This document shows, one piece after another, positions 13,842 through 63,790 of a DNA stretch of 64,000 bases (the first letter of the stretch is position 1; the number at the start of each line of letters is the position of its first letter). The position numbers were made by a program, and so were the translations under genes. Under the pieces are notes generated by a model. That model saw nothing but the letters and a program-made list of their open reading frames with translations. It made no database searches and was not told the DNA's origin. The stretch lies in the sequence record MK250029.1; one strand, given 5' to 3'.

Positions 13842-13864
13842 AATAAAATTAATTAAAAAATTAG

Positions 13865-14354
13865 AAGCTTAGATGGGAATCGAACCCATAAAGTTTTTAA
13901 TAACTTACCACACTTATTCACATAAGCAATACTTGAGTAAACTAACAGCTCATCTGTATTTGACTACTGATTTTGATATTATCTCATGATTACTGACTTT
14001 TACTCTCACTACTGTTAACCATTTTTCATTTTTAAGTATTTTGTGGTCTGAACTTTTTTTTACCATATTTAAGTTTGCGCGCTCCTTATTGTAATACCAA
14101 ATGCTCAATGATTAGGTGATAGTCTGCAAATTAACTATACTTCGTGTACTTAAACGTAGGTATCTCCTATAAAGTCTCATCACAATTTATGCTGTAACAC
14201 TACAATTTACATTTAAAATAGATTCACGTTCTATTACAATTTAGTGGAATATAATCTATTATCAAAAATAGATTAATATTCATTAGGGAGATTTTTATCA
14301 CTATGTATTTCTAACATGTGTAAATATTTTTTAAACTTATTCCAAATCTAAGCT
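13865..14354 (-). ncRNA. 490-nt tmRNA-like / tRNA-mimic RNA
   Basis: 5' AGCTTAG pairs with 3' CTAAGCT; T arm ATGGG-TTCGATT-CCCAT; stemless D-loop ATTTGGAAT; long helix AAGTTT..TTTAC.ACA / TGTG.GTAAG..AAACTT; no long ORF; intergenic. Confidence 0.65.
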
Positions 14355-14384
14355 TAACCATGTTTATTATATATTGTTAATATA

Positions 14385-59402: not shown

Positions 59403-59825
59403 ATGTTAATTATTCTATCAATAGTATTAATTATTGTAGGATTATTTCTTGGAATTTTAATAGGTACTTTAGGATCATTTGGTGATTCTGAAATACCTAT
59501 TAAAGAAGATAAAATAATCAAGAGATGTTTGTTATTTAATATAGCATCTCGGTGTGATAAAATTATACTTGTATGTTGTACACCATTCGGATGGTTAGGA
59601 ATTCTTTTATTATTTGTATGTTGTTTTGTATTTCAACATATTATAGGAATTATGTTTATTAGTCCTTTACCTATGATGGAATTTCTTAATACATTTGAAG
59701 ACAAAATATATAGTCTTGCACTATTATATTTAGTACCTATGTTTGGTGGTTATTTTATAGGTTATAATTATATGAATAATTTTATTAAACGAATAGAAAA
59801 AGAAGAACATGAAGAAAGGAACTAA
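59403..59825 (+). CDS. Membrane protein, hypothetical
   Basis: Three hydrophobic segments. Confidence 0.65.
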   Translation: MLIILSIVLIIVGLFLGILIGTLGSFGDSEIPIKEDKIIKRCLLFNIASRCDKIILVCCTPFGWLGILLLFVCCFVFQHIIGIMFISPLPMMEFLNTFEDKIYSLALLYLVPMFGGYFIGYNYMNNFIKRIEKEEHEERN

Positions 59826-60303
59826 ATTTTATGTTATATTAGGTTATAATACAGAAACAGAAACCTGGTATGGATATGTAGAACATTCTTTTTCTATGGG
59901 TGCAGATAAAAATAGGATTAGAACATTTTCTACATGTAGAGCAGATTATCCTTGGAAAGATAGATCATTTCCAGAGAGAAAAAGAATAGCGAAAGCATAT
60001 TTGAAGAAACATGGTTATAGATGTAATTATGCTCGTGATTATATTATAGACGCAAAGATGAATCCTAATTCACCAAATCAATGGATTTATTTTTATTTGC
60101 GAGATATTGCAGACAATCTTAATAAAAAACATTATAATAATTGTCATTGGAAAGTATATAGAGTAAATTCTAAGTTTTGTCCTATTAATGTAAATATGAA
60201 TGAATATTACAAAACATTAGTAAATAAGAAATTTAGGAAGTCTCTTGACAAATTTCAATTAAGAAATCAAGAATTTTCTGTAAAGGAAGTTTCAAAAGAT
60301 TAA
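59809..60303 (+). CDS. Hypothetical protein
   Basis: 164-aa basic ORF. Confidence 0.65.
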   Translation: MKKGTKFYVILGYNTETETWYGYVEHSFSMGADKNRIRTFSTCRADYPWKDRSFPERKRIAKAYLKKHGYRCNYARDYIIDAKMNPNSPNQWIYFYLRDIADNLNKKHYNNCHWKVYRVNSKFCPINVNMNEYYKTLVNKKFRKSLDKFQLRNQEFSVKEVSKD

Positions 60304-60310
60304 AAATATA

Positions 60311-60565
60311 TCGGTATGGCTCTAAAGGAGAGAGCATCATTTATGACTAATGATGACGAAGATTTGTTCGTAAGTTAATCTTTACTAAGAGAATATACAA
60401 TATTTAGTTATATAGAAGTAATTTAATTGTTATAATGCGAAGACAATTTTATATGAAACTATATATGTCATTTATGAGATTATAGTGAAGAATAGCATTT
60501 ACAGTAACTATAATAAGATGATATAAACAATATAACTTCTGTGGTTCGATTCCACACGTACTGAC
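60311..60565 (+). ncRNA. tRNA-like RNA with ~185-nt variable region (nominal anticodon TGA)
   Basis: Acceptor TCGGTATG/CGTACTGA, D arm GCTC-TAAAGGAGA-GAGC, stem TCATT-TATGACT-AATGA, T arm TGTGG-TTCGATT-CCACA. Confidence 0.65.
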
Positions 60566-60583
60566 TAATAAACATATAACATT

Positions 60584-60802
60584 ATGAAAGAAGAAATTAA
60601 ATTCTTAGGTAAAACACCGAGAGAAATTGCAGAACGTTACTTCAATAAATCATATGAAGGTAAAGAACGATATGATATTTTAGTTGAAGGCTTTATTGAG
60701 GGATTTAATTATCTATTTCCTCATTATGATATAGCTAATACTTTGGTTGAAACATTTGAACGAATTAAAGAATTAGAGAATAAAGAGAAAAAAGATTCAT
60801 AA
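60584..60802 (+). CDS. Hypothetical protein
   Basis: 72-aa ORF between ncRNAs. Confidence 0.6.
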   Translation: MKEEIKFLGKTPREIAERYFNKSYEGKERYDILVEGFIEGFNYLFPHYDIANTLVETFERIKELENKEKKDS

Positions 60803-60829
60803 TTATTTTTTTAATTGAAATAAAATATG

Positions 60830-60837
60830 TATCTTTG
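60830..60837 (+). promoter_or_regulatory. Bacteroidetes-type -7 promoter upstream of a noncoding cluster
   Basis: ttttttaattgaaataaaatatgTATCTTTGt; no long ORF follows for over 1 kb. Confidence 0.7.
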
Positions 60838-60849
60838 TATTGTAAATAA

Positions 60850-61165
60850 TGAACACCTATAAGTGTTAAGTAACATAGGTATGGAAACCCTACGGTTCGT
60901 AAGTAGTAATATCGAATAGTCCGCATAATAGGAACATGTCATTATTTTAACATTTATATAAGAATATACTACATGTCTTATATGAGCGTCAGGAGTATTG
61001 TAACAGAGTCGACGTGTTTACATTTTTAGAGGCGCAGCTTTTAAATCTGACTATTCTACGTAAAGTAGTGTTCTATGTAAAGTAGTGAAGTGCAAGATAC
61101 GGCGTCAGTACAAGTCTATATAATAAGTTGCAAATAAAAATAGAAACTGTTAAAATTCGTATCTA
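60850..61165 (+). ncRNA. Putative structured ncRNA, family unknown
   Basis: GC-elevated, no long ORF, several hairpins, tandem 17-mer ttcta(c/t)gtaaagtagtg (61054-61087). Confidence 0.4.
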
Positions 61166-61169
61166 ATTT

Positions 61170-61340
61170 GTCTGTATTTCACAATGGTTAATGAGGTACA
61201 TGAAAAGTGATTTGGAAGAATCATTATAGATATATATGATTAAGATAACGTTCAACTAAGCTATAGAATAATAGTAAGTACAGCGCTGAAAATATATGTT
61301 TATATGTATTGCGGTTGTGGTTCGATTCCACATACAGACA
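61170..61340 (+). ncRNA. tRNA-like RNA with expanded anticodon and variable arms
   Basis: Perfect acceptor GTCTGTA/TACAGAC + A73, D loop with GG (CAATGGTTAA), T arm TGTGG-TTCGATT-CCACA; 171 nt. Confidence 0.65.
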
Positions 61341-61562
61341 CGACTTATTAATGATGAAAAGTCTGCACTTAACAAAATATAAAAAACATTTTAATGTACT
61401 GTTGATTATATGTTTTAATTTTGTTAACTAAGAGATTCTTGTAAATTATAAAAATTTACAAATCGAGGGGAACGCATAACGGCAATTATGTTAGTACTTG
61501 GCGTTTAATGAAATGAATATGTATATTTGCCGATGTGCATATGAGTGACATTAAATGATAAA

Positions 61563-61655
61563 ATTATAATAGTGTAGCGGTTCGCACGCCCGTTGGTAAA
61601 ACGGGAAGGGTTTATGTTTGAAAGCATATTAGGGGTTCGACTCCCGCTTATAAAC
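61563..61655 (+). tRNA. Degenerate class II tRNA, nominal Tyr(GTA)
   Basis: D stem GTGT/GCAC, anticodon stem CCCGT-TGGTAAA-ACGGG, variable hairpin, GGG-TTCGACT-CCC; G33, weak T stem, 6-bp all-AT acceptor. Confidence 0.45.
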
Positions 61656-61942
61656 AATTAAATTACATAATGTTCTCACGAAGAGCGAGCATCGGAAGGT
61701 GAGCAATTTAGAAAGATATTTAAGAGTGATCATATTAAATTGATTTCTAACAGAAATACGGTGACGTAGGAGCTGAAAAAGAACAAACGTATGGTAATGT
61801 TAACATTATGTATTTTTAAAAAATTTTATTTTTTTCCACACAGACTTTGATACATTTTTTGTATCATATATTATATTTAATTTTGAAGTTAAATCAGATG
61901 CTTGTGATAAGTATCTGATTTTTTTAATTCATAAAAAATATG

Positions 61943-61950
61943 TATCTTTG
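61943..61950 (+). promoter_or_regulatory. Bacteroidetes-type -7 promoter upstream of nadR-pnuC
   Basis: tttttaattcataaaaaatatgTATCTTTGt. Confidence 0.7.
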
Positions 61951-61980
61951 TAATATATTAAATAATAATTAAATAATTAA

Positions 61981-63141
61981 ATGATTAAGAATATAGGAAT
62001 TTGTTTTGGTGGTTATTGTCCTATGCATCAGGGACATCTTGACCTTATAATGAAAGCAAAGAAAGAAAATGATATTTGTTATGTGGTTGTTTGTGGTTAT
62101 ACAGATGAACCACGTGGTAATGAATTAGGTCTTAATATTAATAATAGAAAAAGACTTATTAAAGAGTTTTTTAAAAATGATGAACTTATTCGAGTTCTTA
62201 CTGTAAATGATACAGAATTAGGTATTGATGAAAGTATGTCTGAACATAATTGGAAAGTATGGACAGATTATGTAAAATATCAAATTACAGATGATCTTTG
62301 GGGTGGTGGTCCGACATATCCATTTAGTCCAGATGAAAGGATTGAAGCGCATGAATTGAAACTTACATTCTATGTTGGTGAAAAGTTCTATGTTGAATCA
62401 TTGAATAAATTAAATATTAATGCAGTGTTAGTTGGTTACGATGAGAATTCACCATCTAATAGAAGTAATGATATATCAGCAACATATATTAGGCAAAATC
62501 CTCAATATTATTGGGATAAGATTGTATCAACATTTAAACCTGCATTAACAAAGAAAATTCTTGTATTAGGTACAGCATCAGAAGGAAAATCAACACTTGT
62601 TAAAGATATTGGTAATTATTTTAATATACCATATACAACAGAATTCGGTAGAGATTATATGGAGAAACATTGTATGTTAGATCCTGATATTACTGTAAAT
62701 GATTTTGTTGAATTCCTTATTGGACAGAGACAATACTATTTTGATGCTTTGAATGATAAAGGAAATAAGGGTGTTATCATTTCAGATACTGATAATCTCG
62801 TTACACTTATGTATGCAAAAGCATATGTATCTGATAATAATATGCAAATTACTGAAGATGAATATAACAATATATTGAAACCACTTGCAAAATCATTACA
62901 AACAGGTGTTTCATGGGATGTAATTTATCTTATCAAACCGCATAATAAATTTGTTGATGATGGAACACGTTACATGAATCAATCTTCAATAGATGAGAGA
63001 ATGAAGAATTATAAAATTCTTTTATCATTACTTGAAGAGTTCGGTTTACTTGATAAGGTAATTGAATTGAATGGTTCTTATATGGATCATTTTAATTATG
63101 TTAAGGATTATATCACAAAATTATATGATAAAGAAAATTAA
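61981..63141 (+). CDS. nadR: NadR-type NMN adenylyltransferase / nicotinamide riboside kinase
   Basis: FGGYCPMHQGH (HxGH), SATYIR, then P-loop LGTASEGKST, EFGRDY, SDTD, FVDDGTR. Confidence 0.92.
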   Translation: MIKNIGICFGGYCPMHQGHLDLIMKAKKENDICYVVVCGYTDEPRGNELGLNINNRKRLIKEFFKNDELIRVLTVNDTELGIDESMSEHNWKVWTDYVKYQITDDLWGGGPTYPFSPDERIEAHELKLTFYVGEKFYVESLNKLNINAVLVGYDENSPSNRSNDISATYIRQNPQYYWDKIVSTFKPALTKKILVLGTASEGKSTLVKDIGNYFNIPYTTEFGRDYMEKHCMLDPDITVNDFVEFLIGQRQYYFDALNDKGNKGVIISDTDNLVTLMYAKAYVSDNNMQITEDEYNNILKPLAKSLQTGVSWDVIYLIKPHNKFVDDGTRYMNQSSIDERMKNYKILLSLLEEFGLLDKVIELNGSYMDHFNYVKDYITKLYDKEN

Positions 63142-63790
63142 TAATATATTATATTCAGAGTTTATAGAAGGAAGAAATATTAATGAACATTTGTTTATGC
63201 TCATTGGTATTTTCCTTCAATTAATTGCATGGTATATAACTAAAGATTCATTGATTTCTTTAATATCTGGTGTAACTGGTATTATATCTGTTATATTATG
63301 TTCACAAAGAAAGATTTCATTTTATTTCTTCGGCTTTATACAATTAGGAACATATATGTATCTTGCATGGCAGCAAAGATTTTATGGTGAATTAATAGAG
63401 AATGTATTTTATATTATTACTATGTTAATAGGTATTGTAGTATGGTTAAAAAATTACAATACAGAAGAGCAAATAGTAGAATCTAAAAGACTTTCTGATA
63501 GGTTATTCTATATAATATGTAGTATAATGGTGTTTATCTGTGTATTATTTGGTTATTATATGAAATACTTTACAGATAATACACAACCATTTATGGATTC
63601 ATTTTCAACAGTACCTGCATTTATAGCGCAGACATTGTTAATGTTACGATATAGAGAACAATGGATATTCTGGATTATAATTGATGTTGTTTCTATATTC
63701 ATGTGGATGTTTGCTGATAATTGGATAATGGTTATTCAATTTATATTTTGGACAATGAATTGCATATATGGTTATAGAAAATGGAAATAA
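63125..63790 (+). CDS. pnuC: PnuC nicotinamide riboside/vitamin transporter
   Basis: Multi-TM; ISGVTGIISVIL, PFMDSFST..AQ.L...RYREQW.FWIIID; start taken at ATG 63125, overlapping the nadR stop. Confidence 0.92.
   Translation: MIKKINNILYSEFIEGRNINEHLFMLIGIFLQLIAWYITKDSLISLISGVTGIISVILCSQRKISFYFFGFIQLGTYMYLAWQQRFYGELIENVFYIITMLIGIVVWLKNYNTEEQIVESKRLSDRLFYIICSIMVFICVLFGYYMKYFTDNTQPFMDSFSTVPAFIAQTLLMLRYREQWIFWIIIDVVSIFMWMFADNWIMVIQFIFWTMNCIYGYRKWK

What the first reader, a model, noticed from the sequence alone, without database searches (positions are those of the whole stretch)
60311..60565. tRNA cloverleaf with a ~185-nt structured variable region
Acceptor, D, anticodon and T arms are all recognisable, but 60355-60539 is inserted at the variable arm and has its own pairings (ACGAA/TTCGT hairpin; AAGTTA near 60371 with TAACTT near 60533). 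The anticodon loop has A33 instead of U33, and the acceptor is 8 bp or has a 2-nt bulge. The insertion is not at a usual intron site. Candidate tRNA mimic (anticodon-nuclease decoy, synthetase or ribosome modulator) or a new intron class.
Basis: seen in the sequence. Interest (0 to 1): 0.7.

Follow-up and report, generated by a model that had tools for sequence, protein, structure and literature searches.

The report
tRNA-shaped phage RNA with extra domain
This is a real, conserved and transcribed 255-base RNA of a Lak megaphage that looks like a tRNA at its ends but carries a large, precisely folded extra domain and no usable anticodon, so it is a previously undescribed tRNA mimic, not a tRNA, a tRNA with an intron or a pseudogene.

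Summary
The window is the end of Prevotella phage Lak-C1 (MK250029.1). All are confirmed by compensatory changes in relatives: 73 pairs in 12 helices, 96.5% standard pairs, 24 pairs changed on both sides, against 29-47% and 0-4 in slid controls.

It is not a decoding tRNA:
- The 'anticodon' loop differs between close strains (UAUGACU, UAUAAUU, two 8-nt loops). In distant relatives it is a UUCG tetraloop or a 3-nt loop.
- ARAGORN and Rfam do not call it, even after the domain is deleted in silico.

It is not an intron or junk:
- The inserted domain (four helices plus a covarying kissing loop) is better conserved than the cloverleaf part and than the neighbouring gene.
- RNA-library contigs run straight through both borders.

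It is not tmRNA: there is no conserved tag frame, no conserved G3:U70 and no Rfam match.

The tRNA 'top half' is conserved: the acceptor helix, the T loop and C at position 74 in all 12 sequences examined. The RNA abuts an orphan protein family (P0001) in nine of ten lineages; one truncated contig is the exception.

Best reading: a non-decoding tRNA mimic, matured by tRNA-processing enzymes, whose extra domain carries a still unknown function, probably together with that protein.

The parts
59809..60303 (+). Gene of an orphan protein family (P0001, 164 aa) whose stop codon lies 7 nt before the RNA. It is the conserved neighbour of the RNA.
   Evidence: ORF, translation. Homologues are directly followed by a tRNA-like RNA with a large insertion in 9 lineages, and preceded by one in a tenth. 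No Pfam, PADLOC, PDB-sequence or fold match. PHROG 15953, function unknown.
60311..60318 (+). 5' strand of the 8-bp acceptor-like helix (pairs with 60557-60564).
   Evidence: Three of the 8 pairs change on both sides in Lak-B (TCGGTATG/CGTACTGA against ACAGTATA/TATACTGT). No non-standard cell in 72.
60319..60333 (+). D-like arm: stem 60319-60323 with 60329-60333, loop AAAGG containing GG. It abuts the acceptor helix with no residues 8 and 9.
   Evidence: One pair changes on both sides (T-A to C-G). The GG is kept in most lineages.
60335..60355 (+). Anticodon-arm look-alike: 7-bp stem, loop 60342-60348 (TATGACT) with A at position 33.
   Evidence: The stem covaries at 3 of 7 pairs. The loop is not conserved: TATAATT, TAAGTGTT and TAAGAATT in relatives. 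In L022 the arm ends in a UUCG tetraloop and in L027 in a 3-nt loop.
60356..60371 (+). Hairpin at the place of a class-II variable arm (ACGAA-GATTTG-TTCGT).
   Evidence: Two of 5 pairs change on both sides (CTGAA/TTCAG in L013 and L015). The loop GATTTG is invariant in 7 sequences.
60372..60538 (+). Extra domain, closed by the long-range helix 60372-60377 with 60533-60538. It holds hairpin 60380-60391, helix 60409-60415 with 60459-60465, hairpin 60425-60448, helix 60467-60471 with 60518-60522, and hairpin 60479-60514.
   Evidence: Each helix has at least one pair changed on both sides. RNAalifold on a MAFFT alignment finds the same helices apart from one register. This part is 81-99% identical where the 5' 60 nt are 65-98%.
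60434..60440 (+). Loop residues that pair with 60493-60499 (a kissing loop between the two apical loops of the extra domain).
   Evidence: AATGC/GCATT here, AACGC/GCGTT in L013 and L015, ATTGCAA/TTGCAAT in Lak-B. Two pairs change on both sides and a third is gained in Lak-B.
60493..60499 (+). Partner strand of the kissing loop.
60540..60556 (+). T arm: TGTGG, loop TTCGATT, CCACA.
   Evidence: The loop TTCGANT is kept in the Lak lineages. The stem is weaker in L013 and L015 (one C.A) and has 3 bp in Lak-B, where the acceptor helix can extend to 10 bp.
60557..60565 (+). 3' strand of the acceptor-like helix plus C60565. In 7-bp numbering A60564 is the discriminator and C60565 is position 74.
   Evidence: C at position 74 in all 12 sequences examined, representing ten lineages. 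N73 is A in 8, G in 2 and T in the two Lak-B sequences. One relative encodes ACCA.

Best explanation
The locus encodes a stable, non-decoding, tRNA-shaped RNA of about 255 nt. It belongs to a family present in Lak and related large phages.

Shown:
- A cloverleaf-like shell (8-bp acceptor helix, D-like arm, a second arm, a variable-arm-like hairpin, a T arm) encloses a 167-nt domain of four helices locked by a loop-loop pairing.
- All of these pairings are kept by compensatory changes.
- The region is transcribed.
- The RNA lies 3-12 nt behind the stop codon of one orphan gene family in eight of the ten lineages examined, 41 nt behind it in a ninth, and just upstream of it in the tenth. Here it has no terminator or evident promoter of its own.

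Inferred:
- The RNA is made on the same transcript as the upstream gene.
- It is cut out at its 5' end by RNase P, which recognises the acceptor/T-arm/elbow.
- It is trimmed at its 3' end and its CCA completed from the conserved encoded C74.
- The tRNA 'top half' therefore serves as maturation and stability handle and possibly as a docking surface for tRNA-binding machinery.
- The conserved extra domain carries the specific activity, most likely as a complex with the adjacent protein.

It does not read codons. What the complex does is not known.
For: Structure:
- 73 pairs, 96.5% standard, 24 changed on both sides.
- Slid controls give 29-47% and 0-4. In 2000 column shuffles the maxima were 91.4% standard and 17 pairs changed on both sides.
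- An independent RNAalifold consensus agrees.

Selection:
- The RNA is more conserved than the DNA of the neighbouring gene in four of five Lak-A/C-like comparisons: 98.8 against 92.1%, and 78.7 against 73.8%.
- The extra domain is more conserved than the cloverleaf part.
- There is a single copy per Lak genome.

Not decoding:
- The loop varies and A33 is present.
- Distant members carry a UUCG or 3-nt loop.
- No ARAGORN or Rfam call.

tRNA-type ends: C74 in 12 of 12 sequences in a genome with about 27% G+C, ACCA encoded in L029, and position -1 pairing with 73 with covariation.

Transcription:
- In RNA run X20 one contig spans 60177-61686 at depth 56.5. Depth is 3.7-17.5 upstream and 0 downstream. 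That unevenness is not what contaminating DNA would give.
- Contigs of X15 and X20 cross both borders of the domain.

Context:
- No terminator-like site lies between the upstream gene and the RNA. The next one is at 61891-61921.
- L022 has a terminator right after the RNA.
Against: - No read-level data: all RNA runs were contigs, so the ends, processing, CCA addition and the abundance of this RNA on its own are not shown.
- The structural alignment was made by hand. The 5' arms of Lak-B match only in topology and were left out of the counts.
- Homology with the most distant RNAs (L016, L022, L025, L027, L029) rests on synteny, end architecture and one shared hairpin. It has no score behind it.
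- The link to the protein is adjacency only. The protein has no recognisable RNA-binding fold.
- One truncated gene copy (L020) is not followed by the RNA in the 140 nt available.
- The MFE z-score of the single sequence is only -1.94.
Confidence: 0.55

Rival explanations
1. A class-II tRNA gene interrupted by a new kind of intron between variable arm and T arm. Splicing would give a working 88-nt tRNA.
For: - Lak phages carry tRNA genes with unexplained insertions (PMC6784885).
- The cloverleaf is complete.
- Deleting 60372-60538 in silico gives an 88-nt class-II-like sequence that ARAGORN calls at a lowered threshold.
Against: - The 'anticodon' differs between strains: Ser UGA or Leu UAA in 7-nt loops, and two 8-nt loops in L013 and L015. 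A33 replaces U33. Distant members have a tetraloop there.
- The domain is better conserved than the tRNA part.
- No joint skipping it appears in four RNA runs, and contigs cross both borders.
- No group I intron match in Rfam.
- By inspection there is no bulge-helix-bulge at the borders.
Confidence: 0.07
2. A reduced tmRNA-like rescue RNA, with the adjacent small protein acting as SmpB does.
For: - ARAGORN at 80% threshold calls 60312-60565 a tmRNA, and does the same for the L029 RNA.
- tRNA-like ends enclose a large pseudoknotted domain.
- The gene order resembles smpB-ssrA.
- A G.U lies at the third pair in 8-bp numbering.
Against: - No reading frame is kept between lineages; indels shift it and stops differ (by inspection).
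- The G.U is A-U in Lak-B and C-G in L021.
- No tmRNA match in Rfam.
- It has D and anticodon-like arms that tmRNA lacks.
- The protein has no SmpB domain or fold.
Confidence: 0.07
3. A purely cis-acting processing or stabilising element of the neighbouring mRNA: an RNase P site or a block to 3' exonucleases, with no function as a free RNA.
For: - It starts 3-12 nt after the stop codon in eight lineages, with no promoter or terminator of its own here.
- It sits on the 5' side of the gene in L029.
Against: A minihelix would be enough for processing. A 167-nt domain with four covarying helices and a covarying loop-loop contact, more conserved than the gene itself, is hard to explain this way.
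Confidence: 0.15
4. A decaying pseudo-tRNA with inserted junk.
For: tRNA detectors reject it. The 5' arms evolve faster than the rest.
Against: Covariation in every helix, conservation above that of the coding neighbour, presence in ten lineages, and transcription.
Confidence: 0.02

Closest known systems
tmRNA (ssrA) with SmpB
   Same: The 5' and 3' ends form a tRNA-like acceptor/T-arm module. A large domain with tertiary pairings lies between them. A small protein gene is adjacent.
   Different: It has D-like and anticodon-like arms. It has no conserved tag frame and no conserved G3:U70. The protein is not SmpB, and there is no Rfam match.
Class-II tRNAs, tRNA-Sec and allo-tRNAs (8/5, 8/4, 9/3 shapes; from my own knowledge of Mukai et al. 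2017)
   Same: Long variable-arm hairpin, and an 8-bp acceptor helix with a 5-bp or shorter T stem.
   Different: A 167-nt domain follows the variable arm. There are no residues 8 and 9. A33 replaces U33, the second-arm stem has 7 bp, the anticodon is not conserved, and the RNA is not detected by tRNA or tRNA-Sec models.
The 'enigmatic introns' of Lak tRNA genes (Devoto et al. 2019, PMC6784885, Table S6)
   Same: Same phages. By my inspection of the printed sequences, those insertions are themselves tRNA-like: an 8+5 or 7+6 bp acceptor/T minihelix, a TTCGANT loop and a short CTA/CA tail. They can hold inserts of variable size before the T arm.
   Different: Those sit at position 37/38 inside recognisable tRNAs and are 79-141 nt long. 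This one is free-standing, single-copy, larger, has its own conserved domain, and is not in that paper's tRNA or intron tables.
Bacterial Y RNA YrlA (tRNA-like module; from my own knowledge of Chen et al. 2014)
   Same: A non-coding RNA that mimics the tRNA elbow and acceptor region and works with a partner protein.
   Different: In YrlA the RNA ends lie on the opposite side, in the Ro-binding stem. There is no Rfam match, and no Ro gene here.
GOLLD and ROOL RNAs (large ornate phage-associated RNAs found near tRNA genes; from my own knowledge)
   Same: Large, intricately folded phage RNAs of unknown function that sit among tRNA-like genes.
   Different: They are much larger (about 600-800 nt) and not built on a tRNA frame. 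There is no Rfam match.

Membership tests
Decoding tRNA | Recognised by tRNA detectors at their normal thresholds | tested here: not met
   ARAGORN default and the Rfam gathering and E-value scans give no call. After in-silico removal of the domain there is only one odd call at default settings.
Decoding tRNA | 7-nt anticodon loop with U33 and an anticodon kept among orthologues | tested here: not met
   A33 is present. The loops are TATGACT, TATAATT, TAAGTGTT and TAAGAATT, with UUCG or a 3-nt loop in distant members.
Decoding tRNA | Acceptor helix, T arm with a TTCGANT loop, D loop with GG | tested here: met
   The features are weaker in Lak-B (3-bp T stem, no GG).
Decoding tRNA | Aminoacylation and use on the ribosome | not testable with these tools
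   Needs charging assays.
tmRNA | tRNA-like domain formed by the two ends | tested here: met
tmRNA | Conserved tag reading frame with a resume codon and a stop | tested here: not met
   The frame ARAGORN proposes stops after 8 codons in L013 and runs into the T arm in Lak-B. A 2-nt indel lies just before it.
tmRNA | G3:U70 alanine identity pair | tested here: not met
   G.U only in the A/C, L013 and L015 types and only in 8-bp numbering. It is A-U in Lak-B and C-G in L021 and L022.
tmRNA | Match to the Rfam tmRNA models; SmpB partner | tested here: not met
   No match. The neighbour has no SmpB domain or fold.
Group I intron in a tRNA gene | Match to the group I model, and insertion in the anticodon loop | tested here: not met
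   No Rfam match up to E=10. The insertion lies between variable arm and T arm, and 167 nt is below the usual size.
Spliced tRNA intron of any kind | A joined form in RNA | tested here: inconclusive
   No joint in four RNA runs and contigs cross both borders. But contigs drop rare forms.
Lak tRNA 'introns' (Devoto 2019) | Insertion at 37/38 of a recognisable tRNA, listed in Table S2B/S6 | tested here: not met
   The paper's coordinates equal GenBank coordinates. Nothing is listed at 536.5 kb of C1.
YrlA / Y RNA | Rfam match; ends in a Ro-binding stem | tested here: not met
   No match. The ends form the acceptor helix.

The most novel reading that the evidence does not exclude
The RNA and the adjacent orphan protein form a new kind of tRNA-mimicking ribonucleoprotein. 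It would dock on tRNA-binding machinery of the host (ribosome, RNase P, elongation factors or a tRNA-directed defence) through the conserved acceptor/elbow. It would act through the extra domain: an analogue of tmRNA-SmpB without a tag, used by large, partly recoded phages to control translation.
Probability: 0.12. Interest if true: 0.85.

Novelty: new variant of a known kind. Interest (0 to 1): 0.62.

Why it matters
Few classes of RNA are built on a tRNA frame for a purpose other than decoding: tmRNA, viral tRNA-like structures and Y RNA modules. Each of them revealed new biology.

This locus has several things in its favour:
- A well-supported fold of about 255 nt with a tertiary contact.
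- A conserved partner gene of unknown fold.
- A distribution across Lak megaphages, which are common in human and animal guts, and some related large phages.
- A possible link to two unexplained observations in the Lak literature: strongly expressed intergenic regions and tRNA-like 'introns'.

It is directly testable with RNase P and CCA-adding assays, structure probing and protein binding.

Tried and rejected
- Rfam at gathering threshold on the whole window, and at E up to 10 on the locus and on ten related loci: no family for this RNA.
- ARAGORN with introns allowed gave only spurious long-intron calls that borrow the T arms.
- The reading frame in the 'anticodon' region (ATG at 60344) is lost in L003 and L017. 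It was rejected as a coding feature.
- My first idea that AGTTATAT pairs with ATATAACT was dropped.
- A k-turn or hammerhead reading of conserved stretches did not fit on inspection.
- Riboswitch for the NAD salvage genes downstream: rejected. A promoter, 1 kb of other RNA genes and a terminator lie between them here, and L022 has no such gene.
- Mobile repeated element: rejected, one place per Lak genome.
- The protein neighbour gave nothing in Pfam, PHROGs, PADLOC, PDB sequences, Foldseek, VIA-align or the ESM Atlas. The source name 'homing endonuclease' on one homologue could not be substantiated.
- No whole genome was held for the window.
- A full-length covariance model was not built, because calibration of a 255-position model would exceed the tool's time limit.
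- The higher depth of the X19 contig 60360-60539 is not taken as evidence of excision. Strain mixtures sharing the conserved interior would explain it equally well.

Full report
**Origin of the window**

The stretch 60000-62000 is 100% identical to Prevotella phage Lak-C1, MK250029.1, at 536217-538217, so window coordinate + 476217 gives the record coordinate. Lak-A1 and Lak-A2 carry the locus at 99-100% identity, and Lak-B only its 3' part at 76%. Lak phages read TAG as glutamine (PMC6784885), so ORFs were listed with table 15.

**The observation**

- An 8-bp terminal helix, 60311-60318 with 60557-60564.
- A D-like arm directly abutting it.
- A 7-bp arm with loop TATGACT, with A where U33 should be.
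- The ACGAA/TTCGT hairpin.
- AAGTTA (60372-60377) pairing with TAACTT (60533-60538).
- A perfect T arm.

The single-sequence fold reproduces the outer cloverleaf, though its energy z-score is only -1.94. The word GGTTCGANTCC occurs four times in the window against 0.01 expected. ARAGORN at default settings and Rfam call nothing here. ARAGORN at 80% threshold calls 60312-60565 a tmRNA.

**Relatives**

I collected the region downstream of homologues of the upstream gene. The sources were IMG/VR, metagenome contigs and the large protein collection.

Nine distinct sequences align along most of the RNA:
- Five of the Lak-A/C type.
- Two diverged ones that keep the cloverleaf arms (L013, L015; RNA identity about 78%).
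- Two of the Lak-B type.

More distant lineages have an RNA of 184-277 nt at the same place (upstream of the gene in L029), with tRNA-like ends. These are L021/L023, L022, L025, L027, L016 and L029.

**Structure**

A segment-by-segment alignment, checked letter for letter against the sources, gives 12 helices with 73 pairs. Of 595 cells, 96.5% are standard pairs, and 24 pairs change on both sides. Every helix has at least one such pair.

| Test | Standard pairs | Pairs changed on both sides |
|---|---|---|
| Observed | 96.5% | 24 |
| 3' partners slid by 1-3 columns | 29-47% | 0-4 |
| 2000 within-column shuffles (maxima) | 91.4% | 17 |

RNAalifold on an unedited MAFFT alignment of seven sequences independently returns the acceptor helix, D stem, second arm, variable-arm hairpin, the long-range helix, and three further helices and the T arm. 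Eleven of its pairs change on both sides.

The two apical loops of the extra domain are complementary, and they covary:
- AATGC/GCATT here.
- AACGC/GCGTT in L013 and L015.
- ATTGCAA/TTGCAAT in Lak-B.

Caveats:
- The alignment is manual.
- The 5' arms of Lak-B correspond only in topology and were excluded from the counts.
- The sequences represent about five independent lineages.

**It is not a decoding tRNA**

- The loop of the second arm is TATGACT here and TATAATT in L003 and L017, which otherwise differ at a handful of positions. It is TAAGTGTT and TAAGAATT (8 nt) in L013 and L015.
- In L022 the arm is an 8-bp stem with a UUCG tetraloop. In L027 it is a 7-bp stem with a 3-nt loop.
- Deleting 60372-60538 in silico gives sequences that ARAGORN calls only at lowered thresholds. 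The calls are inconsistent: Ser-tga, Leu-taa, a 4-base 'tata', Ser-act and Arg-tct.

**It is not an intron or junk**

- Against the window, the extra domain plus 3' part is 99, 96, 99, 81 and 81% identical in L011, L017, L003, L013 and L015. The first 60 nt are 98, 86, 92, 69 and 65% identical, and the DNA of the upstream gene is 92, 91, 97, 74 and 72%.
- Each Lak genome holds one copy.

Six RNA libraries from five studies hold about half of the sampled words of 60200-61900. Four of them were laid on the sequence.
- In X20 a single contig covers 60177-61686 at depth 56.5. Depth is 3.7-17.5 upstream and zero downstream. Contaminating DNA would not give that pattern.
- Contigs of X15 (59957-60844) and X20 cross both borders of the domain.
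- No joint is reported in 60311-60565.
- All runs were contigs. Ends, strand and level of this RNA alone cannot be read, and a rare spliced form cannot be excluded.

**It is not tmRNA**

- The frame ARAGORN proposes is not kept. L013 reaches a stop after eight codons, Lak-B runs on into the T arm, and a 2-nt indel precedes it.
- The G.U at the third pair is A-U in Lak-B and C-G in L021 and L022.
- Rfam's tmRNA models match none of the loci.

**What is conserved across all lineages**

- The tRNA 'top half': an acceptor helix of 6-8 bp whose sequence changes completely between lineages, and a T arm.
- Mostly a GG-containing D-like loop.
- In 7-bp numbering, C at position 74 in all 12 sequences, in DNA of about 27% G+C. 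N73 is A in eight. L029 encodes ACCA and L016 encodes GCC.
- Position -1 pairs with 73 and covaries: T-A here, A-T in Lak-B.
- An AT-rich 7-8-bp hairpin about 25 nt before the T arm, flanked by GAG and AAT. It recurs from Lak-C1 to L022 and L027 with different stem sequences.

**Context**

- The stop codon of the 164-aa gene (59809-60303) lies 7 nt before the RNA. In eight lineages the gap is 3-12 nt, in L016 it is 41 nt, and in L029 the RNA lies 9 nt upstream of the gene instead.
- One truncated copy (L020) is not followed by the RNA in the 140 nt available.
- The protein family has invariant E, S, R, C, K and N residues. Its AlphaFold model has mean pLDDT 79.8.
- The protein has no Pfam, PADLOC or PDB-sequence match and no convincing fold match; the best Z is 3.9. 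PHROGs places it in family 15953, function unknown.
- No terminator-like site separates gene and RNA. The next one is at 61891-61921.
- In L022 a clear terminator follows the RNA.

**Mechanism**

The most economical model has four steps:
1. Co-transcription with the upstream gene.
2. Release by RNase P at the acceptor helix.
3. 3' trimming and completion of CCA from the encoded C74.
4. Action as a stable tRNA-shaped RNA whose extra domain, probably bound by the neighbouring protein, provides the function.

The fold, its conservation, transcription and the adjacency are shown. Processing, protein binding and any docking to tRNA-binding machinery are inferred. I put about 0.55 on this model.

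| Rival | Probability |
|---|---|
| Cis-only processing or stabilising element | 0.15 |
| Spliced tRNA with a new intron | 0.07 |
| tmRNA-like rescue RNA | 0.07 |
| Pseudogene | 0.02 |

**Comparison with what is known, and novelty**

Devoto et al. 2019 reported up to 35 tRNAs, 'enigmatic introns' at 37/38 of Tyr, Phe, Gly and Thr tRNAs, and strongly expressed intergenic regions. Their C1 coordinates equal GenBank coordinates, which I verified at the Gly-TCC gene. Nothing is listed near 536.5 kb.

By my inspection of their printed sequences, those introns are themselves small tRNA-like units with 13-bp acceptor-plus-T helices and a CTA/CA tail, so this RNA may be a larger, free-standing relative. 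Later Lak papers and full-text searches gave no description of it.

It works like the known tRNA mimics (tmRNA, YrlA, viral tRNA-like ends) but fails the defining tests of each. I therefore file it as a new variant of that kind.

Noticed in passing
window 60830-61170: A Bacteroidetes-type promoter word TATCTTTG (60830-60837; the same word recurs at 61943-61950) is followed by about 320 nt with no ORF. This stretch is 74% identical to Lak-B1 and has the highest depth in RNA run X19 (1596 at 60860-63). A stretch GAATAGTCCGC...ATAGG loosely recalls the RNase P RNA P4 region, but Rfam finds no family.
   Followed up: partly
window 61170-61340: A second tRNA-like RNA: perfect 7-bp acceptor helix GTCTGTA/TACAGAC and a T arm identical to that of the finding. 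It is 171 nt here but 98 nt in Lak-B1 and L013. The ends and D region are conserved with covarying acceptor helix, and the middle is replaced. Rfam tRNA gives 22.6 bits on the L013 copy.
   Followed up: partly
window 61563-61655: A 93-nt 'tRNA-Tyr(GTA)' called by ARAGORN, with G at position 33, a weak acceptor top and a 3-bp T stem. The anticodon is ATA in Lak-B1 and L013. It is absent from the published C1 tRNA table, and the best Rfam match is tRNA-Sec at 18.6 bits.
   Followed up: partly
window 13842-14384, minus strand: A 540-nt gap without ORFs holds another T arm (ATGGG-TTCGATT-CCCAT at about 13872-13890). It is followed by CTAAGCT-T-CTAA, with a possible bulged 5' partner about 95 nt upstream. 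ARAGORN does not call it.
   Followed up: no
window 60584-60802: A 72-aa ORF starts 19 nt after the RNA. It is present in the Lak-A/C types only and absent from Lak-B1 and L013, where the RNA is followed directly by the promoter region. It has no family match.
   Followed up: partly
window 61981-63790: NAD salvage genes: an NMN adenylyltransferase/kinase of the NadR type (61981-63141) and an NMN transporter of the PnuC type (63071-63790). In L021, L023 and L024 the adenylyltransferase gene starts about 45 nt after the RNA.
   Followed up: partly
L029 712-992 and L016 3025-3211: Distant members of the module. In L029 the tRNA-like RNA ends in an encoded ACCA and lies 9 nt upstream of the protein gene. 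In Lak 'Sonny' (L016, a 660-kb genome) the gene sits inside a tRNA array and is followed by a 187-nt RNA ending GCC.
   Followed up: partly
L029 166-283 and L025 279-394: Rfam tRNA matches of 116-118 nt (54 and 47 bits). These are tRNA genes with insertions in phages outside the Lak A/B/C group, so interrupted tRNA genes seem common in this wider set of phages.
   Followed up: no
window 61891-61921: A strong terminator-like hairpin (14 pairs, then a T run) closes the non-coding RNA cluster just before the nadR promoter word.
   Followed up: no
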